DNA of 64,000 bases from the sequence record NC_017972.1, one strand, 5' to 3'. The notes under the pieces are model-generated. The model was not told the DNA's origin, did no database searches, and worked only from the letters and a program-made list of their open reading frames with translations. Positions 46,411 to 63,534 of this stretch are shown here, one piece after another; within the stretch, counting starts at the first letter, position 1; each line of letters begins with the position of its first letter. The translations under genes were made by a program, and so were the position numbers.

Positions 46411-46721
46411 CTGTCGAAATCCTGCGCTACGAAGCGAAGTGGGGCGAGCACGCCGAATGGCAGGAATGCAGCCAAACGGATTATGAAGCGATTCGCCTGT
46501 CGATTCACCAGCACCAATTCAAAGCCCGCGTGATTGGCATTGTTGAAGACCCCGCCGGTTTGTTGTTGCCCGGTCCGAATGGTTACGAATCGTGGCGTGA
46601 AGCTGCCGTGCATGAGAAGGCGAAGCGTGTTGAAATCGAGCGTGAATTGAAAGAAGTACGCAACGCACTCCGTCCAGTGCAAAAGCTGGAGGCCATTCGC
46701 AAAATTCTGGACGAGGAATAA
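46407..46721 (+). CDS. hypothetical protein
   Basis: 104 aa, ATGA overlap. Confidence 0.65.
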   Translation: MTVEILRYEAKWGEHAEWQECSQTDYEAIRLSIHQHQFKARVIGIVEDPAGLLLPGPNGYESWREAAVHEKAKRVEIERELKEVRNALRPVQKLEAIRKILDEE

Positions 46722-46726
46722 AAAAA

Positions 46727-47167
46727 ATGCGCCGAGGTTCTGAGGGATTTTTCTGGTATCAGGCAATCTACACCGAACTGGCCGACGACCCAGCCGACGA
46801 CCGCGAAGAGGTGCATTACTTTCCGCTGGAGGCCAATCCCAAGCGAAGTAATTACCCTGCGTTGACTAGCATCGGTTGGTTCTACGGACGTGATTTGCCT
46901 TCGCATATTTCTGTATCGATTGATCCTCTGTATCGCGTTCGGCAGATTGAAAACATGCGCAAAGAACGCGGCATTAGCATGGTTGACGCTTTCCATGATG
47001 CTCCGCATTTTTATCAGGAATCCCTGTGGGCGTTCTACGCGAGCATCGGTTACGACTACAAGAAAAAGAAATGGGGAGTGCGGCCTGAGCAAAGCGTGTC
47101 CATGACCCGCGCACAATTGGAGGAATATTGTTTGCAGAAGGATGCTAAATATGCGGACCATCCTTGA
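46727..47167 (+). CDS. hypothetical protein
   Basis: 146 aa, GAGG RBS. Confidence 0.65.
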   Translation: MRRGSEGFFWYQAIYTELADDPADDREEVHYFPLEANPKRSNYPALTSIGWFYGRDLPSHISVSIDPLYRVRQIENMRKERGISMVDAFHDAPHFYQESLWAFYASIGYDYKKKKWGVRPEQSVSMTRAQLEEYCLQKDAKYADHP

Positions 47168-47525
47168 GTTAGCGGACGGCAGGCAATTTGAGATTGCGCC
47201 TCTTAATTTTGAACAGTACGCCAAGCAATACGAGCCGATCAACAGCGTTATGGGCCTAGTGCCGCAGAGCGCTTATGATCACTGGAAAGACAGCAACCGT
47301 TACCGCGAAATTTCTGATTTCACTCTGCCGGAATTAGCAGGCGGGAAGATTACCTATTGCCTGTCCGCAGAGGAACTCGACATTGGCGACATTGCCGATG
47401 ATTGCGAGGACATAGCGCTGGAAATCCTGAAACGTCGCCGTACCGTGACGCAACTCAAACACACAATCAGCCTAGAAGAAATGGAACAACGTTTCGCAGG
47501 CGATGAAGAGAATTCTGATGGCTGA
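47142..47525 (+). CDS. hypothetical acidic protein
   Basis: 127 aa ORF upstream of the topoisomerase. Confidence 0.65.
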   Translation: MLNMRTILELADGRQFEIAPLNFEQYAKQYEPINSVMGLVPQSAYDHWKDSNRYREISDFTLPELAGGKITYCLSAEELDIGDIADDCEDIALEILKRRRTVTQLKHTISLEEMEQRFAGDEENSDG

Positions 47526-49614
47526 AAAGAAAACCCCCAAAGCAGTGAAGGCAAAGCCCGCTGCTGAGACGAAAACGAAGAAAACCAAAGTAGCAGAAGG
47601 CGTGGAGAAAACCACGCGGAAAAAGTCTGCAAGTCAAGACGACTTTACCATCCTTGAAGGGCTGTCTGGCATCCGGCACAATCCGAGTATGTATCTCGGT
47701 GAACGCGGGGCGCCGATGGCCTATCGTTGTATTAAGGAAGCGGTAGACAACTGCTACGACGAACACATTGCAGGCCGCAACAAAGTTATCGAAGTTATTT
47801 TGGACTACGATACCGGCTGCTACATCGTGGCGGACCAAGCGGGCGGCATTCCTACCGATTTCAAGAAATTGGAAGACGGTACGAAAATCAGCATCATGAC
47901 TGCCGCGTACACGAAGACGCACGCAGGCGCAAAATTCAACGATAAAGCGTACAAAACTTCTGCCGGTACTCACGGCATTGGCATGTCGGCAGTGAACGCC
48001 GTTTCCGAACGTATGCGCGTCTGGACAATGTACAACGGCAAGTTGGCTACGCAGGTTTACAGCAAAGGCAAAATTGCGTCGAAGGGCGATCACCCGATCC
48101 CGGCTAAGGCCGTGGACAAAGACGTTATGGATCACCTGAAAGACAAGCTGAAAAAATACGGCACAATCGTCGCTATCGAACTCGACCAAACCGTCGTTTC
48201 CGAAGATGCCCGCCGTGGTAAAGATTTGCCGAAAAACTTCCGCAAGTCTGAGCCGATTGCAGCTGAGGTTGCCAGCTGGTTGTCGAACGTGGCAATGCTC
48301 AACCCCGGTCTGGAAATCCGCTTTGCTTCCATCGTCAAAGGCAAACGCAAAGACGAAACTTTCCTCAACAAGAAAGACCTCGCCTTTGTGCCGAAAGACA
48401 TGTGCGAGCAGCGCGATCTGGTTGCCCAAGGTAAGCCATTTGTTTTCAAGAACGACAACATTACTTGCGCACTGGTTTGGTCCGACCACACCGACGCCGA
48501 TCATTTCCTGTCGTTTGTGAACACGTCGCCTACTGTTGACGGCGGCTGGCACGTTACGGGCTTTACCGCTGCGCTGTCCAAGGCAGTGAAAAAACATGTG
48601 CCGGAAAAGAAACCTGCAAAAGGTAAAAAAGGCGGTCAAGGTTACACCGGTTCTGACCTGCTGATCGGTTTGACTGGCATGTTTGACTGGCGTATGCACG
48701 GCGCGGCCTACACCTCGCAGGTAAAGGATAAACTTTCCTCGAAAGTAGACAAAGAAGTCGAAGAGCTTTTGTTCCCAGCATTCGACGCCTACTTCAAAGC
48801 AAACCCGAAAGTCGCAAAAGATATTATCAAGCGCGCACTGATCATGACCAAAGGTCGTGAAGAGCTGGCAGCGGTTGTTAAATCGATGGCCGACGTGAAG
48901 AAAAAAGGCAAAACAACTCTGCCTGTGAAGCTGGCCGTTGCCCCGCACTGCAAACCGCATGAGCGCGAATTGTTTGTTGTGGAAGGTGACTCGGCAAAAG
49001 GCCCAAGCGTGGATGCGCGAGACGGGCATTTCCAAGAAGTTTTGGCAGCTGGTGGTAAGCCACTCAACGCACTGAAAGCCACAATGGCAAAAGTGCTGGG
49101 CCACGAAGAAATTTCCAACTTCCTCGTAGCGATGGGTGCGGACGTGAAGTCGCTTGATCCGAAAGCGGAAAAGCCGACAATCAGCACTGACAAACTGCGC
49201 GTTGCAAACGTCTTTTTCCTTGTTGACCCGGACCCCGACGGTTTCCACATTGCGGTTCTGTATCTGGCAGCAATTTATCGCCTTATGCCGCAGCTTTACC
49301 ACGAAGGCCGGGTGTTCTGTGTGCAGGCGCCGCTGTATGCCGCACTGGATTCCAAAGGCACACTTTATGGCGGTATGACCTTTGACGAATGCCGTAGCGC
49401 CGCGCCGAAGTCGGTAAAAGACCAAGACATTGTGCGCATCAAAGGTTGGGGTGAAGTTGGCCCTGAATATATCGGTCCGATTGCATTCGACAAGCGCTAT
49501 CGCAAACTGATCCGAATCAATCCATTTGAAAGCGTTGCTGATGAACAGCATTTCCGGGCCGTAGTGTCTGAGGATGCCGTGAACCGTCGCCGCTTGCTGG
49601 GGCTTAATGACTGA
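47518..49614 (+). CDS. gyrB: type IIA topoisomerase ATPase/TOPRIM subunit (GyrB/ParE-like)
   Basis: IRHNPSMYLG, EAVDNCYDE, GTHGIGMSAVNA, VEGDSAKG, DPDPDG, RIKGWGE; probable start at 47518. Confidence 0.92.
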   Translation: MAEKKTPKAVKAKPAAETKTKKTKVAEGVEKTTRKKSASQDDFTILEGLSGIRHNPSMYLGERGAPMAYRCIKEAVDNCYDEHIAGRNKVIEVILDYDTGCYIVADQAGGIPTDFKKLEDGTKISIMTAAYTKTHAGAKFNDKAYKTSAGTHGIGMSAVNAVSERMRVWTMYNGKLATQVYSKGKIASKGDHPIPAKAVDKDVMDHLKDKLKKYGTIVAIELDQTVVSEDARRGKDLPKNFRKSEPIAAEVASWLSNVAMLNPGLEIRFASIVKGKRKDETFLNKKDLAFVPKDMCEQRDLVAQGKPFVFKNDNITCALVWSDHTDADHFLSFVNTSPTVDGGWHVTGFTAALSKAVKKHVPEKKPAKGKKGGQGYTGSDLLIGLTGMFDWRMHGAAYTSQVKDKLSSKVDKEVEELLFPAFDAYFKANPKVAKDIIKRALIMTKGREELAAVVKSMADVKKKGKTTLPVKLAVAPHCKPHERELFVVEGDSAKGPSVDARDGHFQEVLAAGGKPLNALKATMAKVLGHEEISNFLVAMGADVKSLDPKAEKPTISTDKLRVANVFFLVDPDPDGFHIAVLYLAAIYRLMPQLYHEGRVFCVQAPLYAALDSKGTLYGGMTFDECRSAAPKSVKDQDIVRIKGWGEVGPEYIGPIAFDKRYRKLIRINPFESVADEQHFRAVVSEDAVNRRRLLGLND

Positions 49615-52216: not shown

Positions 52217-52279
52217 CTGTAAATTCAGGGTAGGTGAACGTGATTTGCCTGCCCTAATTTCAAAATCCGGTACATCGCA

Positions 52280-52946: not shown

Positions 52947-53792
52947 ATGACCCTACTTTCGGTAGACGGCACCAACACGATGCACCGTGCGCACCATGCG
53001 ATACGATACATGGAACACAAAGGGACGCCGACAAATGCCATCGTCGGGTTCTTTAACATTGTGCGTTCTAATTTGAAAATCACTGGCGCCACACACGCCC
53101 TCGCTTCTTTCGACCGCCCCGGCGAAAACTTCCGGCATAAGCTGCACCCGGATTACAAAGGGCATCGGGAAAAGAATCCTGAGAAGAGCGCAGCGCTGGC
53201 GAAACAATTGCCAATCATTTGCGAATTGCTGGATGCTTTGAACTTTCCGTTTTTCGGCAAGCGCGGCATCGAAGCGGATGACGTGATTGGTTCCACCGCC
53301 TACAACTACACGGGCGGATTGGCCTACATCCTGTCGGGTGACAAAGACTTTGCGCAGGAATTGACTGCAAAGCACGTTCGATTGATCAACCCGAACAAAA
53401 AGCTAACCGTTACGCCCAAAATGTGCAAAGACGTTTACGGCGTTCGCCCAAAGCATATGATTGATTTCCTAATGCTGGATGGCGATGAAATCGACGGAAT
53501 CGACGGAATACCCGGCGTTGGCCCGGTAACGGCCATTAAGCTGATTGAAGAGTTCGGAAAGGCGGAAAACATTCCATTGGATCGTTTCCCACCAAAATCA
53601 AAAACTGTAAATATAAAGCAAAGGCTAAAGCTTAATCGAAAGCTTGTAACGATTAGGCATGACCTGTATGATGCGAATATGGAATTGGATTTGTCAATTT
53701 CAGATAGTATCAACACCAAAGCCTTCAAAAAGATTTGTGAGCGATACGGATTGGATAAGCTAAAGCAGTCCGTATTGACGCATGGCTTGTAG
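52947..53792 (+). CDS. 5'-3' exonuclease / flap endonuclease (Pol I 5' nuclease-like)
   Basis: VDG, FD..FRH..YKGHR, EADDVIG, SGDKD, GD..DGIPGVGP helix-hairpin-helix. Confidence 0.92.
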   Translation: MTLLSVDGTNTMHRAHHAIRYMEHKGTPTNAIVGFFNIVRSNLKITGATHALASFDRPGENFRHKLHPDYKGHREKNPEKSAALAKQLPIICELLDALNFPFFGKRGIEADDVIGSTAYNYTGGLAYILSGDKDFAQELTAKHVRLINPNKKLTVTPKMCKDVYGVRPKHMIDFLMLDGDEIDGIDGIPGVGPVTAIKLIEEFGKAENIPLDRFPPKSKTVNIKQRLKLNRKLVTIRHDLYDANMELDLSISDSINTKAFKKICERYGLDKLKQSVLTHGL

Positions 53793-55590: not shown

Positions 55591-55621
55591 ACGCTAAATT
55601 TTAAAACTTTGGAGATTCATC

Positions 55622-57472
55622 ATGGCTAACGAAATGGTTGGTGTTCTGGTAAACGTTATTCGCGGCAAAAAAGAGCCGGTCAAAGAGCGCGTTATCAAGC
55701 AGCTGAAAACTGGCGTGTGCCGTACCGAGGCCGGTACTGAATTCAACGTGTCCGACGTTTTCAATCGCGGCAAAGGTAAATTCGTCACCCTTGGCGCTAA
55801 AGGCGGCGCCGTTGCGAAACCATCGCCAGCAAAAGAAACCGTATCGGCTGCGTCTGCACGTCCGGCCCCTGATGCTGTGACTTTCAAAGAGCTGGAAGAA
55901 AAGAACGGCAAGATTAACGGCGTTGCTGTTGCCCGCTTCCTGAAATCGAAAGGTCTGGTAGAAACCGAAGACGGCAATACTTACGAGCTGGCGAACATTC
56001 GCCGCCGTGGTAAAGGTTTCGTTTGCGACGACGTTGCGGGCACTGCACCGAAGTCCTCCAAAGCTTCGCAGGAAGAAAACACACGCAAGCCGCGTACTAC
56101 CGAAGCCAAGCCAGCAGCCAAAGCTTCGACCAAAGCGCCGAAAGAAACCACCAAAGGCGGCGCGAAGAAAAAGCAAGTCATTCTGGATTTCGACGCTGCA
56201 ACCTTTAGCGCCGATGCTGGTTCGTTCACCAACAACGATATCCGTCACAAGGAAATCGACGTTGACGGCGAATTGACCAAAGTTGATACGCTGTATAAAT
56301 CCGGCAAATTCATCACCGAGGCCGGACACACTCTGCACGTTGACGACGTGCGCGCACTGGCAAATGGCACCTTCTGCGTTTACTCGGAAGAGTACGTAGA
56401 CCAGCTGAAAGAAGCGTTTGAAGAAGAGCAGGCCGCAGCCCAGCGTGAACTGGATAACGCCCGCGAAGCCAGCACGCCGAAAATCAAATACAAAGGCCGC
56501 CGCCTGCACGTTGGCGATACCATCCACGTCATCGAGCACAAATATCGCGACGATACCGTTAAGACCAATAAAGGTCTGCGCGTTGCGATTGAAGAAATCG
56601 AAGTCATTAACGAACGCCTCGTTTACACCGGCGAAATTCAACAGCCAAAAACCAGTGGCGCACTGCCGAAGAAACGTAACGTTCCGGTCGCTCCACAAGC
56701 ACCGCGCAAAGTTACAGAATTCGATCCAGAAACCGCCGCCGATCTGCGCGACGTGCTGGGCGACGCAATCCGCAAAGTAATCGCGACCGATTACGTGCTG
56801 GACGTTGTAAGCGTGTTCGGTTCGCGTGGTCAGAAATTCTTTACCCTCGGCGTTACGCTCGCACTGCCCGACGTGACCGAGGATGAAATTCAGGATTTTC
56901 TGACTCGCCAGAATTCTGAAAACTATTCCGACGATAAAAACTCGGACCACGGTTCGCACCAGCTTCCTGATGAAGAGGAAGAGGACGAAGACGAAGTAGA
57001 CGAAGACGAACAGGAGGAAGAGGAAGACGAACAGGAGGAAGAGGAAGACGAACAGGAGGAAGAGGAAGACGAAGAACTGGAAGTTGACGAAGAGCTGGAA
57101 GTTGACAGCGATTTCGGTAAACACCAGACTTTTGAAACCGAAGCCGAAACTTCTTTCCCTGCTGATCCGTCCGCCGATATCAAAGGCGCTGATGGCCGTA
57201 TGCAGGCAATCATTAAACGCGCTGGTTACTTCAAAGCAATGCACAACGCGGCAACAGAGTGGTACAGCTCGCAGGAAGTCTTCGACGCTTTCGGTTACGA
57301 AATCGAACCGGGCCAGTGCGTTAAAGTCGATGGCGAAGACCATATGCTGTTTGGTCTGTTCAACGGCGAAATTGGCCTGATGCGTGTTAGCACTCAGTCC
57401 GTGCGTAAGGGCGTTAACTTCGACGTGTTCAAATCCATTTGCGCACAAAACGATATCGAACTGCCGCAATAA
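55622..57472 (+). CDS. large hypothetical protein with three short beta-repeats and an acidic tract
   Basis: 616 aa, GGAG RBS; TE.G..(F/Y/L).V..V...(G/A).G.F.V x3. Confidence 0.8.
   Translation: MANEMVGVLVNVIRGKKEPVKERVIKQLKTGVCRTEAGTEFNVSDVFNRGKGKFVTLGAKGGAVAKPSPAKETVSAASARPAPDAVTFKELEEKNGKINGVAVARFLKSKGLVETEDGNTYELANIRRRGKGFVCDDVAGTAPKSSKASQEENTRKPRTTEAKPAAKASTKAPKETTKGGAKKKQVILDFDAATFSADAGSFTNNDIRHKEIDVDGELTKVDTLYKSGKFITEAGHTLHVDDVRALANGTFCVYSEEYVDQLKEAFEEEQAAAQRELDNAREASTPKIKYKGRRLHVGDTIHVIEHKYRDDTVKTNKGLRVAIEEIEVINERLVYTGEIQQPKTSGALPKKRNVPVAPQAPRKVTEFDPETAADLRDVLGDAIRKVIATDYVLDVVSVFGSRGQKFFTLGVTLALPDVTEDEIQDFLTRQNSENYSDDKNSDHGSHQLPDEEEEDEDEVDEDEQEEEEDEQEEEEDEQEEEEDEELEVDEELEVDSDFGKHQTFETEAETSFPADPSADIKGADGRMQAIIKRAGYFKAMHNAATEWYSSQEVFDAFGYEIEPGQCVKVDGEDHMLFGLFNGEIGLMRVSTQSVRKGVNFDVFKSICAQNDIELPQ
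57005..57067 (+). repeat. coding tandem repeat, 3 x 21 bp
   Basis: GACGAACAGGAGGAAGAGGAA x3. Confidence 0.95.
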
Positions 57473-57543: not shown

Positions 57544-58656
57544 ATGAACATTTTTGAACAACTGAAAAACGCCGCTTACCCAGCCCTGCAAACCACCTAT
57601 CGCGAAATCGCGTCGTCTATTTTCAGCACGTCGCCGGATGAACTGAGCGAGTGGCGCGAAGTCGATCCTATCGACGTTGGCTACGATGAAGACGCCGACC
57701 CGATGCACGCTAAGCGTGTGGTTTTCCCACTGTGGGAAATTCTGCCTTACGAATTCCAATCAGAGGCCGTGCATTCTGTTCTGTCCGCGCTGGATTTGGA
57801 ATACGAAACTTTCCATTACACCGCCGACATTCCGGGCTATATCATCGCGTACATTACCAGCGATCCGTTCGACCCTGCTGATATCATCGCTTTCTTTGGC
57901 GACCAAGAAGAGGAAGAGGAAGACGAAGAGCACGAAGAGGAAGAGGACGACGACGATAATCTGATCCCGCAGCGTTCGGGCGAAGTCGTGCGATTGGTTC
58001 CGCCCACTGCTGAATTGCAGCGACATGTCGTAGAAGACGAACCGTTTGACGTTGAAGACGAGCCGCTTGATATCGAAGTCGAACCGCTGCAACCGGAAGT
58101 AGCGACCCAGCCTGAAACCGCACCACAAGCGCCTGTAAGCGAAACCCCGGCCCCTGTCCTTACCGATGTTCGCGAAGTGGCTCAAACCGCACAGGAAGAG
58201 CAACCAGCGCCAGAAGTGCAGGCCGAACCAGCGCCAGAAGTGCAAGCCGAATCAGAGGCCGAACAAGCCTCGGTAATGGACGTGCAACCGGCTGTAGAAC
58301 CAGAACCGCAAAAACCGCAAGGCCCGGTACAAGATGATCCTGAATTGATCGTTGCGCGCCACGCTGAAAAACTGCAATTGCTGCAAGGCCGAGTGCCTAC
58401 CGATGTTCTCACTGAATTCAACGGTGAAAACAATGTTCTTTCGGTTGTGTACGAACGCCCGGTCGGTGCGGATATTTCCGAAGGCACCACCAGCGACGAA
58501 TGCCGTATCACCATGAAAAACGAACCGTTCCCGCCAGTTGGGCCTGTGCGTTTCCTCGATTTCTTCTACATGCACGACATGCAAGGCGATTTGCTGGTGC
58601 GTGCTGCGAGTGAAGACGCCGTGCTGCAAACGCTTGACAATCTGATGGGCAACTAA
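57544..58656 (+). CDS. acidic, Pro/Glu-rich hypothetical protein
   Basis: 370 aa, GAGG RBS; poly-E/D tract and APEVQAE repeats. Confidence 0.75.
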   Translation: MNIFEQLKNAAYPALQTTYREIASSIFSTSPDELSEWREVDPIDVGYDEDADPMHAKRVVFPLWEILPYEFQSEAVHSVLSALDLEYETFHYTADIPGYIIAYITSDPFDPADIIAFFGDQEEEEEDEEHEEEEDDDDNLIPQRSGEVVRLVPPTAELQRHVVEDEPFDVEDEPLDIEVEPLQPEVATQPETAPQAPVSETPAPVLTDVREVAQTAQEEQPAPEVQAEPAPEVQAESEAEQASVMDVQPAVEPEPQKPQGPVQDDPELIVARHAEKLQLLQGRVPTDVLTEFNGENNVLSVVYERPVGADISEGTTSDECRITMKNEPFPPVGPVRFLDFFYMHDMQGDLLVRAASEDAVLQTLDNLMGN

Positions 58657-59216: not shown

Positions 59217-59495
59217 ATGAACTACGCTACGCTCGCCTCCGCCGTTCTTGGCCTGATGGAGCATCACCCCTATATCATCACCGATAACCCAACGACTGAC
59301 ACCGCATATGATGCGGCGTGCAATTTGAATCGTGCGCTCGACTTGCTGCCCGATGCGTTGCCTTGCCGTGCATTTGCAACTCCCGGCAATACGTTTTTTG
59401 TTATTCGCGTTTCTGAAATCGCAGAGAATATCGACCTGCTCGAAACCCACTGCGACAAACGCCACCTACAAGACATTCAGCAATTTGCGAGCTGA
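59217..59495 (+). CDS. small protein resembling NAD-dependent ligase domain Ia
   Basis: EHHPYIITDNPTTDTAYD matches the LigA HH.Y..D.P..D..YD pattern. Confidence 0.5.
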   Translation: MNYATLASAVLGLMEHHPYIITDNPTTDTAYDAACNLNRALDLLPDALPCRAFATPGNTFFVIRVSEIAENIDLLETHCDKRHLQDIQQFAS

Positions 59496-59498
59496 CCT

Positions 59499-60794
59499 AT
59501 GGAATTGCTAACCGCGATGATTCACCGCTTGTATGAGCGGGGCCACTTGAAAACCTGCAAACCTGCCGAAGATCACACGACCTATTCATACGAATATATG
59601 GGGCGTCTGGTTAAGCAGGCGGTGACGGTGGATGTACGTATGAAACGGACCGAACTACTGCGAATTGTGAACCGCGCTTACAACGGTTCCCCCGAGGACA
59701 TGCACACGCTGGCGATGCTCTACAACACCGGCTATGGCGTGCCCTACGACCGCGAGCGCGCCATTCTCTGGATGCGTTTCGCCACGCAACAAGGCATGTA
59801 CTACGATACGTTCGGCGCAGCGTATCAGCGTGCATTGATCGAAGCACAAAATTGTCCCGAGACGATTTTCCCTGATCCGATTATTTATCCGTGTCTGGAT
59901 ATCATCCAGAAAATTCACGACGTACATAGCGATTCCAAATTGCGGTTAGGCTGCGCCGTGATGCCGCGCCTTGAAGGCATTCGCGTTTATTTGATTTACC
60001 GTCACGTACCGGGCGTAACTCCACACTTGTACGCAGGTTTTTACCACGACGGCGAAAACTATTTCATGGCACTGGATAAGCTGGTTGCTTTGGGTGTGCC
60101 TCGCTATTTCGGCGAGATTCGCGACAAGGTAATCATTACTGACTATGCGCCATTCGGCAATAACACAATGTACGTGGTGGCCGGTACGATTTACGTGCCT
60201 GAGTCCAAACGCGCAGGTCAAACGCATATGGAAGTTTTCAATTCGTTTATGACGGATGATTCCACGCTGCTGACCCGTGCGCATTTCGACATTGAAGACG
60301 ACAAGGCCGCGCTGGAAGAGGCGATTAAAACTGTAAATAAGTTAGAGAGACAGCGAGAACGTTTTGAAGGCGCCAATCGGCCAATGCCCGAGGAAAGCCT
60401 AAAGGCATTGAAGAAAGCAAAGAAACAGCGCCGTCTGCTGCGTGAAACGCTTGCGGTTGCTGATCCTGACGCTGATTACCAGCGTTATTTGGAATCGCGG
60501 CCCGAATCCCGTTTGCGCTTTGTTGCATCTGAGCTGTATCGCTGGAACCGTCGCCTTGGCTTGCATACCGTTCCGATGGGGCGGCAAGGGCAACAGCACC
60601 TATCATCCATTGGCTTTACCAGTCTCGACCATCCAACATTGGAATTCGCCGGTTGGATTGCCGATCATACTGACGTAGCCAAAACTGTAAATATGTATGA
60701 AAGGGCATTAGATGCAAAGGTGAAATCCTTGATTATGTTCCCAGCACCTAATTCTTCTGCTCGTTTCGTTGACGTATCGAGGATTGAACTGTGA
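59499..60794 (+). CDS. Sel1-repeat protein fused to a degenerate NAD-ligase adenylation domain
   Basis: Sel1: LAMLYNTGYGVPYDRERAILWMRFATQQG; ligase motif I-like PRLEGIRVYLIY; motif III-like VVAGTIY. Confidence 0.65.
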   Translation: MELLTAMIHRLYERGHLKTCKPAEDHTTYSYEYMGRLVKQAVTVDVRMKRTELLRIVNRAYNGSPEDMHTLAMLYNTGYGVPYDRERAILWMRFATQQGMYYDTFGAAYQRALIEAQNCPETIFPDPIIYPCLDIIQKIHDVHSDSKLRLGCAVMPRLEGIRVYLIYRHVPGVTPHLYAGFYHDGENYFMALDKLVALGVPRYFGEIRDKVIITDYAPFGNNTMYVVAGTIYVPESKRAGQTHMEVFNSFMTDDSTLLTRAHFDIEDDKAALEEAIKTVNKLERQRERFEGANRPMPEESLKALKKAKKQRRLLRETLAVADPDADYQRYLESRPESRLRFVASELYRWNRRLGLHTVPMGRQGQQHLSSIGFTSLDHPTLEFAGWIADHTDVAKTVNMYERALDAKVKSLIMFPAPNSSARFVDVSRIEL

Positions 60795-61660
60795 GTGACA
60801 CCATTTCGCACGAAGACCGGCAACAACAGCAATTGCATATGCGGCAAAAAGATTTGCCGCCTGCGCAAGAGCCAGAAGTTTTCAATCGTTTGCAAAGCCA
60901 CAACGCTAGCAACAGAAACCTGAAAGGGGAATTCCTGCTCAAGTTGGTGCCGCGTGTGGACGTGGTATTGAGCGCCTGCCTCAATACTGTAAATGATGTA
61001 GTAGACGAACACCGAACGCTGATCATCGGCGGCGAGGAACGTTCGCTCTACCGCCCGCTTTCCCGCAAAGAGCAAGGCGTAGCGATTCAGCCGCTGACTG
61101 ACCTGTATCAATACGTCACCGAAATTGCTGCAAATGAATACGTCGTTTTCGGCACCGACAAAGATCACGCCGAACGCGTAAGCGCTCTAGTTGAATTGCT
61201 GAATCAACATATGAAAGCCAGCTTTGCTGGTAGCGCATATGAAAACGAAAATGGTGATAGCGAATTCGCTATTTCTCAACGTGATTACTTCCAAACCAGC
61301 ATCCACGTTAGCGACGTTGAACGCGGAACTGTAAATGTAGTATATCTGAGCATTCGTGTAATCATTCACGCTGCCAGCCTGACCAAAGGCAACGCCGACC
61401 CGGAAACTGCGGTTAAGAACTTCAACGGTTCGTATCGCACCGTGGTCAAAAACTTTGCGAATGCTACCGGGATTGAAACCGGTGTGCATGTTGCTTTTGA
61501 CGTTTCTAATTTCACTGTACGTCCTCAATTGCTGTCCCTGTTTACCGCACTGTGCGGCGAAGAGCAGACCAGCGTTGAAGCGGTAAACCCTCAACATTAT
61601 CACGGCGCTAACACGTTGGTAAGCGTCGTTCTTTCGACAAAGGCACTGAAAAATGGCTAA
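60791..61660 (+). CDS. hypothetical protein
   Basis: 289 aa, GTG start overlapping the upstream stop. Confidence 0.7.
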   Translation: MSDTISHEDRQQQQLHMRQKDLPPAQEPEVFNRLQSHNASNRNLKGEFLLKLVPRVDVVLSACLNTVNDVVDEHRTLIIGGEERSLYRPLSRKEQGVAIQPLTDLYQYVTEIAANEYVVFGTDKDHAERVSALVELLNQHMKASFAGSAYENENGDSEFAISQRDYFQTSIHVSDVERGTVNVVYLSIRVIIHAASLTKGNADPETAVKNFNGSYRTVVKNFANATGIETGVHVAFDVSNFTVRPQLLSLFTALCGEEQTSVEAVNPQHYHGANTLVSVVLSTKALKNG

Positions 61661-62204
61661 GGCTGACAAAGCTCCAAAATCCAAAGCACGCGGCAAAGTT
61701 TCCAAACTCGACAAGGCTCTGCGTAAGCTGAACGGCACCAGCGCAAAAACCCCATTCACTCTGAAATCCGGTCAGTTCACCGTGACCAGCTACGCGGTCC
61801 AGCCTACCGAAGTTCCGGGCTACCTGATCGACCGTTCGGAAACTCACGTTGTTTACCGCCACAAGAAAACCAGCGCCTCGAAACAAATGGTCGTTTCGGT
61901 ATTCCCGATTGCCCAAGTGCTGGGCCTGCTGGGTGGCAAAGACGGCGGTTCGATTACCGTTCCGCAACGTCGCGCTTTCAACAGCGTAACCGGCACCCTG
62001 AAATTTGAAGGCAGCACCGTAGCCGTCACCGACGAACACGGCGTTGTTTCCTATATCGACCTGTCGAGCGGCGATCACGAAATTCGTGCAGCCGATGCCG
62101 AAGGTTCGCAAGCCTCGGGCCGTGGCGCCAAGGCTGATAAAGGTGACGGCAAGAAGAAAGCCAAAGTCACCGATATCAAAGAAGGCAAAAAGAAAAAAAA
62201 GTAA
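61653..62204 (+). CDS. hypothetical beta-rich protein with Lys-rich termini
   Basis: 183 aa; ends KEGKKKKK. Confidence 0.75.
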   Translation: MAKADKAPKSKARGKVSKLDKALRKLNGTSAKTPFTLKSGQFTVTSYAVQPTEVPGYLIDRSETHVVYRHKKTSASKQMVVSVFPIAQVLGLLGGKDGGSITVPQRRAFNSVTGTLKFEGSTVAVTDEHGVVSYIDLSSGDHEIRAADAEGSQASGRGAKADKGDGKKKAKVTDIKEGKKKKK

Positions 62205-62260: not shown

Positions 62261-62348
62261 ACTGTAAATACATAGTAAGAGCGAACGATTCAGCGAAGGC
62301 GCCACTGATAGCCGCCTAGCCGGACACCGCCATACAAAACTGTAAATA
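62261..62348 (+). promoter_or_regulatory. tandem pair of ACTGTAAATA motifs
   Basis: copies at 62261-62270 and 62339-62348 upstream of the acidic protein gene. Confidence 0.7.
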
Positions 62349-62396: not shown

Positions 62397-62876
62397 ATGG
62401 CAAAGGCAAAAAACAGCAAGAAAGGCAAGAACAAAGCAGCCCCGGAAATTTCCGCTGATCTGATGAACCTGATCAATCTGGACGTGCTGCAAATCGTTCT
62501 GCAAGCCCTGCAAGACGCCGGTTGCGAAACCGCCGAGGATATGATCGGCGCCGTTGGCATGATGCAGGAAAAGCGTGAAGAAGAAGACGAAGACGAAGAC
62601 GAAGAGGAAGAAGACGAAGACGAAGACGAAGAGGAAGAAGACGAGGACGAAGAAGACGAGGACGAAGAAGACGAGGACGAAGAAGACGAGGACGAAGAAG
62701 ACGAGGACGAAGACGAAGAAGACGAAGACGAAGACGAAGACGAAGAAGACGAGGATGAAGACGAAGACGAAGAAGACGAAGAGGACGAAGAGGACGAAGA
62801 CGAAGACGAAGACGAAGAAGACGAAGAGGACGAGGATGAAGACGAGGATGAAGAAGACGAAGACGACGACGAATAA
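62397..62876 (+). CDS. polyacidic protein (99-residue Asp/Glu-only tail)
   Basis: GGAG RBS; codons from 62577 to 62873 encode only D or E. Confidence 0.85.
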   Translation: MAKAKNSKKGKNKAAPEISADLMNLINLDVLQIVLQALQDAGCETAEDMIGAVGMMQEKREEEDEDEDEEEEDEDEDEEEEDEDEEDEDEEDEDEEDEDEEDEDEDEEDEDEDEDEEDEDEDEDEEDEEDEEDEDEDEDEEDEEDEDEDEDEEDEDDDE

Positions 62877-63000: not shown

Positions 63001-63534
63001 ATGGCAAAGAATGACGTAACCATCAACGGTAAACAGGAAATCTCCCGTCTGCGCAAACAAGAGCGCGCACTGGAAGCCACTCAGAAAGCAAACGAGAAAG
63101 TAGCCGACGCGGTTAACTCGCAGCTGGAAGAAGTGCGCGCCCAAATCAACGCCGTTGAAGGCAAGCTGGGCGGCGACGAAGCCCCAGCAAAAGGCAAAGC
63201 CAAAGCCGCCGCCAAGGCCCCTGCCAAAGCCGACAAGAAAGCCCCGGCCAAAGGCAAAGCCAAAGCCGAAGAAAAACCGGCTAAAGGCAAGAAATCTACC
63301 AAGGAAGAAGAGAAGCCTGCTAAAGGCAAGAAAACTGCCAAGGTAGAAGAAAAGCCTGCCAAGAAAGCCAAGAAAGAAAAGGCCGAAGAAAAACCGGCCA
63401 AGAAGGACAAGAAAGCCAAGGCCGAAGAAAAGGCCCCGAAAAAGTCCAAGAAAGCCGACAAGGCCGAAAAGGGCGGCAAGAAGTCCAAAAAGAAAGAAGG
63501 CAAATCCAAAAAAGACTTTGACGATTTCGAGTAA
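63001..63534 (+). CDS. Lys/Ala-rich histone H1-like protein with an N-terminal coiled coil
   Basis: EKPAKGKK-type repeats; 177 aa. Confidence 0.75.
   Translation: MAKNDVTINGKQEISRLRKQERALEATQKANEKVADAVNSQLEEVRAQINAVEGKLGGDEAPAKGKAKAAAKAPAKADKKAPAKGKAKAEEKPAKGKKSTKEEEKPAKGKKTAKVEEKPAKKAKKEKAEEKPAKKDKKAKAEEKAPKKSKKADKAEKGGKKSKKKEGKSKKDFDDFE

What the first reader, a model, noticed from the sequence alone, without database searches (positions are those of the whole stretch)
59217..60794. Split, catalytically dead NAD-ligase homologue with an inserted Sel1 repeat
Seen: a 92 aa ORF resembles LigA domain Ia (HHPY..DNP..DTAYD). The next ORF has a Sel1 repeat (59688-59795), then an adenylation-like domain: CAVMPRLEGIRVYLIY versus E. 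coli WCCELKLDGLAVSILY, VVAGTIYVP versus EVRGEVFLP, LRFVASEL versus LTFFCYGV. The adenylated Lys of KxDG is Arg (59967-59969), motif IV DG is absent, a coiled coil replaces NPRNAAAG, and there are no OB, zinc or BRCT domains. Both frames are intact, which argues against a decaying pseudogene. Inference: a ligase fold repurposed as an NAD/AMP-binding sensor or decoy, or as a host-protein inhibitor recruited through Sel1.
Basis: partly seen in the sequence, partly recalled or inferred. Interest (0 to 1): 0.75.

Follow-up and report, generated by a model that had tools for sequence, protein, structure and literature searches.

The report
Dead NAD-ligase fold in jumbo phage
A conserved jumbo-phage protein (Lu11 gp161) reuses the core fold of the bacterial NAD-dependent DNA ligase but has lost every catalytic residue and gained a Sel1 repeat and a long helical arm. 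It is best read as a non-enzymatic scaffold, and the small gene in front of it is not a split-off ligase piece.

Summary
The window is Pseudomonas phage Lu11. The two ORFs are gp160 (92 aa) and gp161 (431 aa), both annotated as hypothetical.

- A 36-sequence family profile aligns to a LigA adenylation-domain profile (hhalign Prob 85-91%, P about 1e-6; shuffled or reversed controls score 17-24 against 51-57).
- An AlphaFold model (pLDDT 86.6) has NAD+-dependent ligases as its top 16 PDB Foldseek hits, followed by a sharp drop to noise.
- All catalytic or nucleotide-contacting positions (K115, D117, R136, E173, Y225, D285) are replaced, mostly by variable residues. Structural Gly, Pro and aromatic positions are kept.
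- One Sel1-like repeat (residues 64-99) and a helical hairpin of variable length are real. OB, Zn, HhH and BRCT domains are absent.

Two parts do not hold:
- "Split" is not supported. The gp160 family profile shows no similarity to LigA domain Ia; only the Lu11 copy gives a weak pairwise match.
- The K-to-R change is specific to the Lu11 clade.

Lu11, HRDY3 and PaBG each also carry a normal full-length LigA elsewhere. gp160-gp163 are abutting or overlapping genes, and the gene order is conserved.

Best reading: a ligase-derived pseudoenzyme that acts as a protein scaffold. An NAD-sensor role is unlikely. I rate it a new variant of a known kind, of moderate interest.

The parts
59217..59495 (+). 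gp160, a 92-aa acidic small protein. It belongs to a fast-evolving family that is always found immediately upstream of the gp161 homologue. It is not a demonstrable LigA domain Ia.
   Evidence: ORF. Homologous ORFs of 80-100 aa lie upstream in all Lu11-like loci and in L036. hhalign against LigA gives Prob 0.1-0.2%. Pairwise BLASTP to E. coli LigA 15-74 gives only E 0.008.
59499..60794 (+). gp161, 431 aa, PHROG 35683. A LigA-NTase-derived pseudoenzyme with an N-terminal Sel1-like module and a helical hairpin insertion.
59499..59642 (+). gp161 residues 1-48: N-terminal helix plus a beta-hairpin, with no similarity to LigA.
   Evidence: AF2 secondary structure H3-13, E28-34, E39-45. hhalign of residues 1-145 against LigA scores 16.1, P 0.13.
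59643..59858 (+). gp161 residues 49-120: four-helix module holding one canonical Sel1-like repeat (residues 64-99, 59688-59795).
   Evidence: Pfam Sel1 E 3.5e-4 at residues 70-99. PDB Sel1-repeat proteins E 1e-10 and 8e-11. Thousands of Sel1-repeat proteins hit only residues 50-120. Helices 50-61, 65-77, 85-96 and 105-118. G78 and W91 are invariant in 36 sequences.
59859..60215 (+). gp161 residues 121-239: N-terminal half of the NTase-like core. The motif I-like strand is at residues 151-168 (59949-60002), with R157 (59967-59969) in place of the adenylated Lys. The motif III-like strand is at residues 224-234 (60168-60200), with T230 in place of the Glu.
   Evidence: hhalign alignment and residue map; codon check; strands 153-158, 161-168, 176-183 and 224-232.
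60216..60503 (+). gp161 residues 240-335: antiparallel helical hairpin inserted between motif III and motif IIIa. Its length varies from 31 to 141 aa across the family.
   Evidence: AF2 helices 243-252, 266-291, 298-320 and 323-333. It is a gap in LigA in the hhalign alignment. Length and charge table.
60504..60749 (+). gp161 residues 336-417: C-terminal half of the NTase-like core. The motif IIIa-like strand is at 338-347 (60510-60539). The conserved L-G-F lies at 371-373. The motif IV-like strand is at 405-414 (60711-60740), with K409-S410 in place of Asp-Gly and F414 in place of Lys.
60750..60794 (+). gp161 residues 418-431 plus the stop codon: a conserved C-terminal tail that is modelled with low confidence. 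Its equivalence to motif V could not be assigned.
   Evidence: R422, F423, R428 and I429 are invariant in the Lu11-like clade. pLDDT is below 50 for 417-431. hhalign stops at residue 417.
60791..61660 (+). gp162, 289 aa. Its GTG start overlaps the gp161 stop codon (GTGA). It is the syntenic partner in all clades and its function is unknown.
   Evidence: No LigA similarity.
61653..62204 (+). gp163, 183 aa, PHROG 22271, basic (pI 10) with a Lys-rich tail. It overlaps gp162 by 8 nt and is conserved next to the gp161 family in PaBG and in metagenomic clades.

Best explanation
gp161 descends from the adenylation (nucleotidyltransferase, NTase) domain of an NAD+-dependent DNA ligase and no longer works as an enzyme.

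Shown:
- It keeps the LigA-type core: the strand order of motifs I, III, IIIa and IV, and the structural Gly, Pro and aromatic residues.
- It has lost the lysine nucleophile, the metal- and ribose-binding acidic residues, the adenine-stacking Tyr, the NMN-binding domain Ia, and all DNA-clamping domains (OB, Zn, HhH, BRCT).
- It has gained an N-terminal module with one Sel1-like repeat, and a helical hairpin of variable length between motifs III and IIIa.
- The phage's real ligase is a separate full-length LigA gene.

Inferred:
- gp161 works as a rigid non-catalytic scaffold or adaptor.
- The Sel1-like module, the hairpin arm and the conserved C-terminal tail bind partner proteins. The most likely partners are the products of the translationally coupled neighbours gp160, gp162 and gp163. 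These genes appear to lie in one middle/late transcription unit that begins beside replication genes.
- gp160 is a fast-evolving small partner protein, not a detached domain Ia.

The overall confidence of 0.55 blends about 0.85-0.9 for 'dead LigA-NTase homologue, not split' with about 0.35-0.4 for the scaffold function.
For: Identity and context:
- The window is Lu11, and both ORFs are annotated hypothetical.

Homology to the LigA NTase domain:
- hhalign of the 36-sequence family A2 against the 14-sequence LigA alignment A3 gives Prob 84.8-90.8%, P 1.2e-6 to 6.5e-6. About 180 columns align, covering gp161 151-417 and E. coli LigA 109-293.
- Controls: reversed profiles score about 19. Forty block-shuffles give mean 17.5, sd 2.7 and a maximum of 24.4.
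- The AF2 model has pLDDT 86.6 and pTM 0.77.
- Foldseek against the PDB returns NAD+-dependent ligases as ranks 1-16 (E 1.4e-4 to 3.4e-3, prob 0.95-1.00). The next hit has E 0.25, and no ATP-dependent ligase appears.
- An earlier, poorer model already gave 3PN1 as the top hit.
- In BFVD, phage NAD ligases follow directly after the family members.

Loss of catalysis:
- K115 maps to R157, which is variable in distant members.
- D117 is variable, R136 is variable, E173 becomes T, Y225 becomes S/H/T, and D285 is variable.
- G118, Y125, P156, G172, P177, F222 and G250 are retained.
- No charged residue is invariant across the 36 sequences.

Selection:
- There are more than 25 homologues of constant length at 47-96% identity, plus distant clades at 19-38%.
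- The family is found only in phages. A scan of 185,579 bacterial and archaeal genomes found none.

Separate real LigA: present in Lu11 (record 46475-48400), HRDY3 and PaBG.

Operon:
- The gene junctions are TGAcctATG, GTGA and an 8-nt overlap.
- Synteny holds in the Lu11-like loci, L036, PaBG and L035.
- No exact promoter motif lies between 52217 and 62262, and no one-mismatch match lies between 53605 and 61329.
Against: - The homology is remote. It shows up only with the widened family profile. The Lu11-like profile alone scores 19.4, and HMM-to-sequence searches of Pfam and the PDB find no ligase.
- Foldseek E-values are modest, TM-scores are low (0.21-0.42) and global RMSD is large. The insertions and the extra N-terminal domain account for this, but I could not do a domain-level superposition because no coordinates were available.
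- The scaffold function is inferred only from loss of catalytic residues and from gene context. No partner, ligand or phenotype is known.
- Two pocket-side basic positions are fairly conserved. R162 is basic in 29 of 36 sequences. The K290 equivalent is Arg or Lys in 21 of 25 distant members. Residual binding of a phosphate or nucleotide is therefore not excluded.
- PaBG gp128 is not among the 14 abundant virion proteins, but that assay is insensitive.
Confidence: 0.55

Rival explanations
1. NAD/AMP/NMN-binding sensor or decoy. The dead ligase pocket still binds the nucleotide without reacting, for example to sense or buffer NAD+ during infection or to counter NAD-depleting defences.
For: The fold is that of the NAD+-dependent ligase adenylation domain. 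R162 and, in most distant clades, an Arg at the K290 position are conserved beside the former pocket.
Against: All residues that contact adenine, ribose and metal in LigA are replaced, mostly by variable residues. These are the E113, K115, D117, R136, E173, Y225 and D285 equivalents. The NMN-binding domain Ia is absent: the gp160 family and gp161 residues 1-145 show no Ia similarity. In the Lu11 clade the K290 equivalent is Q/H/F/S. No PADLOC or anti-defence family match.
Confidence: 0.07
2. Non-catalytic DNA-nick or DNA-end binding factor. The NTase remnant, with the often basic hairpin, recognises nicked or 5'-phosphorylated DNA. It then recruits or regulates the phage's real LigA or other replication proteins.
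For: The LigA NTase domain contacts the nick in the E. coli LigA-DNA complex 2OWO, which is among the Foldseek hits. The hairpin is net basic (+5 to +13) in many distant clades. The gene lies in a transcription unit that starts beside DNA polymerase and topoisomerase genes and next to the basic protein gp163.
Against: The hairpin is not basic in the Lu11 clade (net -5 to +2). No basic residue is invariant across the family. The OB and HhH domains that give LigA most of its DNA affinity are missing, and gp162 and gp163 do not resemble them.
Confidence: 0.15
3. Inhibitor or hijacker of a host protein, docked through the Sel1-like module. Possible targets are host LigA partners, the sliding clamp or a defence protein.
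For: Sel1-like repeats are protein-interaction modules, and the repeat is the best-conserved part of the N-terminus (G78 and W91 invariant). The family is confined to phages.
Against: The hosts differ widely (Pseudomonas, Dickeya, probably a cyanobacterial phage), yet the protein is a core syntenic gene tightly coupled to phage neighbours. That pattern fits a phage-internal complex better. No host target can be named from sequence.
Confidence: 0.15
4. Split ligase. gp160 is domain Ia and gp161 is the adenylation domain of one former ligase gene cut in two, analogous to the T5-type two-subunit NAD+ ligases.
For: Pairwise BLASTP of Lu11 gp160 against E. coli LigA 15-74 gives E 0.008 and aligns Y, D, Y and D of the Ia motif. 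The two genes are 3 nt apart. Split NAD+ ligases exist in T5-like phages (PDB 9i5i).
Against: The gp160 family profile against LigA gives Prob 0.1-0.2%. The Ia-like residues are unique to the Lu11 copy. The LigA HMM scores gp160 at -1.3 bits. About 150 residues of unrelated N-terminal sequence in gp161 lie between gp160 and the NTase core. In PaBG, L035 and L037 the upstream small ORF is not recognisably related.
Confidence: 0.05
5. No true relationship. The similarity to LigA is convergent or an artefact of profile and model building.
For: Sequence-only searches find no ligase. TM-scores are low. Small LigA subsets lose the hhalign signal.
Against: Two independent methods agree on the same family and the same register. 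The controls score far lower. Sixteen of the top 16 PDB hits are LigA, followed by a 70-fold gap in E-value. Invariant structural residues coincide: Y125/Y167, P156/P201 and G118/G160.
Confidence: 0.05

Closest known systems
NAD+-dependent DNA ligase LigA, adenylation (NTase) domain (Pfam PF01653; PDB 6KSC, 3PN1, 1DGS, 4GLX, 3BAC, 2OWO)
   Same: Core fold and the order of motif I, III, IIIa and IV strands. Shared structural residues: G118, Y125, P156, G172, P177, F222, the L-x-x-x-G-F helix-turn, and the motif IV Gly in most clades.
   Different: No Lys nucleophile, no motif I Asp, no motif III Glu and no motif IV Asp. No domain Ia and no OB, Zn, HhH or BRCT domains. A 31-141 aa helical hairpin is inserted between motifs III and IIIa, and a new N-terminal Sel1-like module is present. 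Not detected by the Pfam model.
T5-type heterodimeric NAD+ ligase (subunits A and B; e.g. phage DT57C ligA/ligB, PDB 9I5I phage PR1)
   Same: A phage-encoded LigA-type NTase domain on its own polypeptide, with neighbouring genes that might act as partners.
   Different: T5 subunit A keeps domain Ia and, in the A3 alignment, the conserved catalytic positions. Subunit B supplies OB, Zn and HhH. Here the catalytic residues are gone, and the neighbours gp160, gp162 and gp163 resemble no ligase domain.
Sel1-like repeat (SLR) proteins (PDB 6ONW, 8SXQ, 6OK3; MotX)
   Same: One repeat with the SLR signature, matched at E 1e-10 and 8e-11.
   Different: A single repeat flanked by two helices rather than a tandem superhelix, and fused to an NTase-like core.
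PHROG 35683 (phage protein family of unknown function)
   Same: gp161 is a full-length member (E 4e-245).
   Different: The family carries no functional or structural annotation. The link to LigA is added here.

Membership tests
NAD+-dependent DNA ligase (LigA) | Adenylation/NTase fold with motifs I, III, IIIa and IV in order | tested here: met
   hhalign Prob 85-91% with controls. Foldseek top 16 PDB hits are all LigA.
NAD+-dependent DNA ligase (LigA) | Motif I KxDG with the lysine that is adenylated | tested here: not met
   R157-L-E-G160 in Lu11. The Lys position is R/L/V/D/M/Q and the Asp position is variable across the family.
NAD+-dependent DNA ligase (LigA) | Motif III Glu, motif IIIa aromatic, motif IV Asp-Gly...Lys | tested here: not met
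   E173 becomes T230. Y225 becomes S/H/T. D285 becomes a variable residue. G286 becomes A/S in the Lu11 clade but stays G in distant clades. K290 becomes F/Q/H in the Lu11 clade and R in distant clades.
NAD+-dependent DNA ligase (LigA) | Motif V Lys (K314 in E. coli) | tested here: inconclusive
   hhalign ends at LigA residue 293, and the gp161 tail 418-431 is modelled at pLDDT below 50.
NAD+-dependent DNA ligase (LigA) | Domain Ia with the NMN-binding residues (Y22, D32, Y35, D36 in E. coli numbering) | tested here: not met
   gp160 family against LigA gives Prob 0.1-0.2%. gp161 residues 1-145 against LigA gives P 0.13. The residues are not conserved in the gp160 family, whereas D32, Y35 and D36 are invariant in 14 ligases.
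NAD+-dependent DNA ligase (LigA) | OB fold, Zn finger, HhH and BRCT domains | tested here: not met
   gp161 ends at residue 431. The gp162 and gp163 family profiles against full-length LigA give P 0.5 and 0.078. No Pfam domains.
NAD+-dependent DNA ligase (LigA) | Reaches the Pfam DNA_ligase_aden model | tested here: not met
   No hit for any of the 36 family members, even at E up to 10.
Sel1-like repeat proteins | Match to the Sel1 repeat signature | tested here: met
   Pfam E 3.5e-4, 21.5 bits, below the 30.7-bit gathering score, which a single repeat cannot reach. PDB SLR proteins E 1e-10 and 8e-11.
Sel1-like repeat proteins | Tandem array of repeats forming a superhelix | tested here: not met
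   Only one stretch matches (residues 64-99). The model shows four helices at 50-118.
T5-type split NAD+ ligase | Active subunit A (Ia plus NTase) next to a subunit B (OB, Zn, HhH) | tested here: not met
   Catalytic residues are absent. The neighbours do not resemble Ia or OB/Zn/HhH.
PHROG 35683 | Full-length profile match | tested here: met
   E 4.3e-245, residues 1-431.

The most novel reading that the evidence does not exclude
The ligase-derived core may keep a non-catalytic phosphate-recognition pocket. The evidence for this is the conserved G-x-R after the motif I position and an Arg at the motif IV Lys position in most clades. With the Sel1 module and the hairpin, it could then detect or shield nicked or 5'-adenylated DNA, or an NAD-derived nucleotide. 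That would make it a new class of ligand- or nick-sensing pseudoenzyme, used by jumbo phages in replication control or against NAD- or nick-triggered host defences.
Probability: 0.1. Interest if true: 0.8.

Novelty: new variant of a known kind. Interest (0 to 1): 0.55.

Why it matters
Catalytically dead descendants of the ligase/capping nucleotidyltransferase fold are not, to my knowledge, an established class. I also found no paper describing one in phages.

This one is a conserved, syntenic gene in Lu11, HRDY3 and PaBG, which also keep a working LigA. Structure-only matches suggest it is also in Dickeya phage JA13 and probably NCTB. That makes it a clear case of an essential DNA enzyme's core being converted into a non-enzymatic part.

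The result gives a structural annotation to PHROG 35683 and a testable handle on an uncharacterised four-gene module of jumbo phages. It also warns against annotating such genes as 'DNA ligase'.

Tried and rejected
- Direct sequence searches gave only Sel1 or coiled-coil hits and no ligase. These were Pfam, PHROGs, NCBIfam, PADLOC, and PDB phmmer and hmmsearch with the A1 and A2 profiles.
- Pairwise BLASTP of gp161 against E. coli LigA was not significant, although its second-best segment is the motif I alignment.
- The first AF2 run, on Lu11-like sequences only, gave pLDDT 70 and a single marginal LigA hit. It was superseded by the run on the widened alignment.
- The Lu11-like-only profile against LigA showed no signal.
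- A LigA HMM scored against individual family members was uninformative at -5 to +7 bits.
- gp160 as domain Ia was rejected at the family level.
- gp162 or gp163 as a remnant 'subunit B' (OB/Zn/HhH) was rejected.
- I tried to find which LigA lineage is the closest source by splitting the LigA alignment. The signal fell to P about 0.01 in each subset, so no conclusion is possible.
- A profile search of the 5.8-billion-protein index with A2 added no new members.
The scan with A1 found no cellular homologue.
- gp162 and gp163 profiles against the PDB gave nothing usable. The gp162 hits to designed Kelch-like proteins had no significant stretch.
- Literature searches for a dead LigA paralogue, or for work on these genes, found nothing. 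The Lu11 genome announcement is not held.
Full report
**Identity of the region.** The window is 100% identical to Pseudomonas phage Lu11, a 280.5-kb jumbo phage of P. putida. Window coordinate plus 62,000 gives the record coordinate. The two ORFs in the finding are gp160 (59217-59495, 92 aa) and gp161 (59499-60794, 431 aa), both annotated 'hypothetical protein'. They sit on the + strand in a run of tightly packed genes, downstream of a topoisomerase II gene and a gene annotated DNA polymerase I.

**Direct searches.** gp161 matches PHROG 35683 (unknown function) over its full length (E 4e-245). In Pfam it matches only one Sel1 repeat at residues 70-99 (E 3.5e-4). That is below the gathering score, as expected for a single repeat. 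PDB sequence searches give only Sel1-repeat proteins (E 1e-10 with the sequence, 8e-11 with the family profile) and coiled-coil noise, and no ligase. gp160 matches nothing. The Sel1 observation at 59688-59795 (residues 64-99) is therefore confirmed. The ligase resemblance cannot be seen with ordinary sequence tools.

**The family.**
- The word-indexed search found 25 homologues of 425-434 aa at 47-96% identity, on contigs of up to 320 kb.
- The exhaustive search added about 25 full-length relatives at 19-38% identity. It also returned thousands of Sel1-repeat proteins that hit only residues 50-120.
- Among isolated phages, the gene is found by sequence in Lu11, HRDY3 and PaBG gp128.
- It is found by structure in Dickeya phage JA13 and in a fourth protein that is probably from phage NCTB.
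- A scan of one genome from each of 185,579 bacterial and archaeal species found none.
- In the 36-sequence alignment A2, the only invariant residues are G78, W91, P125, Y167 and Y178. Nearly invariant are L11, A60, G63, Y75, P156, G160, L177, P201, Y216, G372 and F373. These are structural residues, and none is charged.

**Test of the ligase claim, sequence level.**
- I built a 14-sequence alignment of LigA domain Ia plus adenylation domain (A3). It contains E. coli LigA, an E. coli-like LigA from a viral contig (L018) and 12 diverse phage ligases.
- hhalign of A2 against A3 gives Prob 84.8%, P 6.5e-6, over 180 columns. It aligns gp161 151-417 to E. coli LigA 109-293.
- The distant clades alone give Prob 90.8% (P 1.2e-6), and gp161 from residue 145 onward gives 90.4%.
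- Controls: reversed profiles score about 19 (P 0.13-0.15). Forty block-shuffled LigA profiles score 17.5 ± 2.7, with a maximum of 24.4, against 51-57 observed.
- The Lu11-like clade alone gives no signal, so the widened family was needed.

**Test of the ligase claim, structure level.**
- With the widened alignment, AlphaFold2 gives pLDDT 86.6 and pTM 0.77.
- Foldseek against the PDB returns NAD+-dependent DNA ligases at ranks 1-16: M. tuberculosis, H. influenzae, T. filiformis, E. coli and E. faecalis LigA, and the phage PR1 heterodimeric ligase. E-values run from 1.4e-4 to 3.4e-3, with probability 0.95-1.00.
- Rank 17 falls to E 0.25 (nanobodies). No ATP-dependent ligase, RNA ligase or capping enzyme appears.
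- TM-scores are low, at best 0.42 normalised to the 255-residue NTase-only chain 3BAC.
- In the viral structure library, phage NAD+ ligases come directly after the family's own members.
- Two independent methods therefore point to the same family in the same register. I treat homology to the LigA NTase domain as well supported, at about 0.85-0.9.

**Loss of catalysis.** The mapping through the hhalign alignment is.

| E. coli LigA residue | Role | Lu11 gp161 and Lu11-like clade | Distant clades |
|---|---|---|---|
| K115 | AMP nucleophile | R157 (invariant in the clade) | R/L/V/D/M/Q |
| D117 | motif I | E159 in Lu11; variable | variable |
| R136 | nucleotide contact | H183 in Lu11; R or H | variable |
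| E173 | ribose contact | T230 | mostly T, also Y or V |
| Y225 | adenine stacking | S344 in Lu11; H, S or T | mostly T or S |
| D285 | motif IV | K409 in Lu11; variable | variable |
| G286 | motif IV | S410 in Lu11; A or S | G in 19 of 25 |
| K290 | motif IV | F414 in Lu11; Q, H, F or S | R in 19 of 25, K in 2 |

- The structural positions G118, Y125, P156, G172, P177, F222 and G250 are retained.
- R157 is codon cgc at 59967-59969.
- Motif V could not be assigned. The last 14 residues are conserved in the Lu11 clade but modelled at low confidence.
- The protein has no OB, Zn, HhH or BRCT part, and the downstream gp162 and gp163 families show no similarity to the LigA C-terminal half.
- 'Catalytically dead' is supported, but the K-to-R substitution is a clade-specific detail, not a conserved feature.

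**The added parts.**
- Residues 1-48 form a helix and a beta-hairpin.
- Residues 49-120 form four helices containing the single Sel1-like repeat.
- Neither region resembles LigA domain Ia.
- Between motifs III and IIIa there is an antiparallel helical hairpin (helices 266-291 and 298-320). Its length ranges from 31 to 141 aa across the family. Its net charge ranges from about -5 in the Lu11 clade to +13 in distant clades.

**gp160 and the word 'split'.**
BLASTP of gp160 against E. coli LigA gives E 0.008 for that single comparison, aligned to LigA residues 15-74.
- A homologous 80-100 aa ORF lies directly upstream of the gp161 homologue in every Lu11-like locus and in the more distant L036.
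- In that family the Ia-like residues are not kept. Y19 is Ile elsewhere, D28 is variable, and Y31 is Y/F/C/E/A/T. Only an Ala-Ala pair is invariant.
- The family profile has no similarity to LigA (Prob 0.1-0.2%), and a LigA HMM scores Lu11 gp160 at -1.3 bits.
- In PaBG, L035 and L037 there is also a small upstream ORF, but it is not recognisably related to gp160.
- gp160 is therefore a fast-evolving small protein linked by position to gp161, not a detached domain Ia. The Lu11 resemblance is best explained by chance.

**Context.**
- Lu11 has a normal full-length NAD+-dependent ligase at record 46475-48400, outside the window. HRDY3 and PaBG have one too. gp161 is therefore not the phage's ligase and not a uniquely decaying copy.
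- The gene order from gp157 to gp163 is conserved in 14 Lu11-like loci and in L036. The order small ORF, gp161, gp162-sized ORF, gp163 is conserved in PaBG and L035.
- The junctions suggest translational coupling. gp160 and gp161 are 3 nt apart, the gp162 GTG start overlaps the gp161 stop (GTGA), and gp162 and gp163 overlap by 8 nt.
- The phage's annotated middle/late promoter motif (CTGTAAAT-N5-GTA) is strongly enriched in the window: 12 matches against 0.6 expected. On the + strand it occurs at 52217, at 53605 with one mismatch, at 61329 with one mismatch inside gp162, and at 62262 and 62340. gp160 and gp161 therefore appear to lie in one transcription unit that runs through gp163.
- PaBG gp128 is not among the 14 abundant virion proteins reported for PaBG (PMC7412058).

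**Mechanism.**
- Shown: a LigA-type NTase core without catalytic or nucleotide-contacting residues, fused to a protein-interaction repeat and a helical arm. It is under purifying selection in jumbo phages of the Lu11/PaBG group, and those I checked for a ligase gene also carry a real ligase. It is also tightly coupled to three neighbouring genes.
- Inferred: it is a non-enzymatic scaffold or adaptor whose binding surfaces are the Sel1 module, the hairpin and the C-terminal tail. Its partners are probably gp160, gp162 and gp163. I put about 0.35-0.4 on this functional reading.
- The sensor model is disfavoured because no nucleotide-contacting residue and no NMN-binding domain is conserved. It is not excluded, because R162 and the motif IV Arg of distant clades are conserved basic residues beside the former pocket.

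**Novelty and verdict.**
- I found no description of this family or of a dead LigA paralogue in the searchable literature.
- It fails every catalytic membership criterion for LigA while sharing its fold. I therefore rate it a new variant of a known kind: a ligase-derived pseudoenzyme with a new architecture.
Two parts of the interpretation need correcting: the gene is not split, and it is probably not an NAD sensor.
- Interest is moderate at 0.55. The evolutionary finding is solid and unusual, but the function is still unknown.

Noticed in passing
window 62397-62876 (gp164) and 63001-63534 (gp165): Directly downstream, behind two copies of the phage promoter motif, lie two oppositely charged proteins. 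gp164 is hyper-acidic (pI 4.05, with a run of about 110 residues that is almost only Asp and Glu). gp165 is a Lys/Ala/Pro-rich basic protein (pI 9.9). PaBG has a gp165 homologue at the same relative position.
   Followed up: partly
window 55622-57472 (gp157) and 57544-58656 (gp158): Both carry long acidic low-complexity tracts. RefSeq calls gp158 a 'putative polyphosphate kinase', but it has no Pfam, NCBIfam or PHROG match, so the name looks unsupported. The 622-aa antisense ORF at 55601-57469 mirrors gp157 and is most likely an artefact.
   Followed up: partly
window 61653-62204 (gp163, PHROG 22271): A basic protein with a Lys-rich C-terminal tail. It is the most conserved neighbour of the gp161 family (56-67% identity in Lu11-like phages, 36% in PaBG, 31% in L035). 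It has no PDB or Pfam match.
   Followed up: partly
window 60791-61660 (gp162 family, alignment A5): The family profile hits designed Kelch-like 'SAKe' proteins at E 3e-8, but with no individually significant stretch. This is probably summed weak matches to the repeated designed sequence and not homology.
   Followed up: no
window 13234-62355, 12 sites: The motif CTGTAAAT-N5-GTA, annotated in the record as the putative middle/late promoter, occurs 12 times against 0.6 expected. All sites before 40 kb are on the - strand and all sites after 43 kb are on the + strand, matching the switch in gene orientation and AT skew near 40-43 kb.
   Followed up: partly
gp161 residue 162 (window 59982-59984): Two residues after the motif I Gly there is a conserved basic residue: R in all 11 Lu11-like sequences and R or K in 18 of 25 distant ones. 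This gives G-x-R. From memory, that recalls the KxDGxR form of motif I in ATP-dependent ligases and capping enzymes. The 14 NAD+ ligases in A3 have Ala or Ser at this position.
   Followed up: partly
L001 (NC_017972 record annotation): The RefSeq record carries a 'promoter' regulatory feature spanning 107991-280538. This is evidently an annotation error.
   Followed up: no
L032 (Escherichia phage DT57C 53790-55746): T5-like phages encode their NAD+ ligase as two adjacent genes, subunits A and B, separated by about 200 nt. This is a known, genuine split ligase and a useful contrast to gp160/gp161.
   Followed up: no
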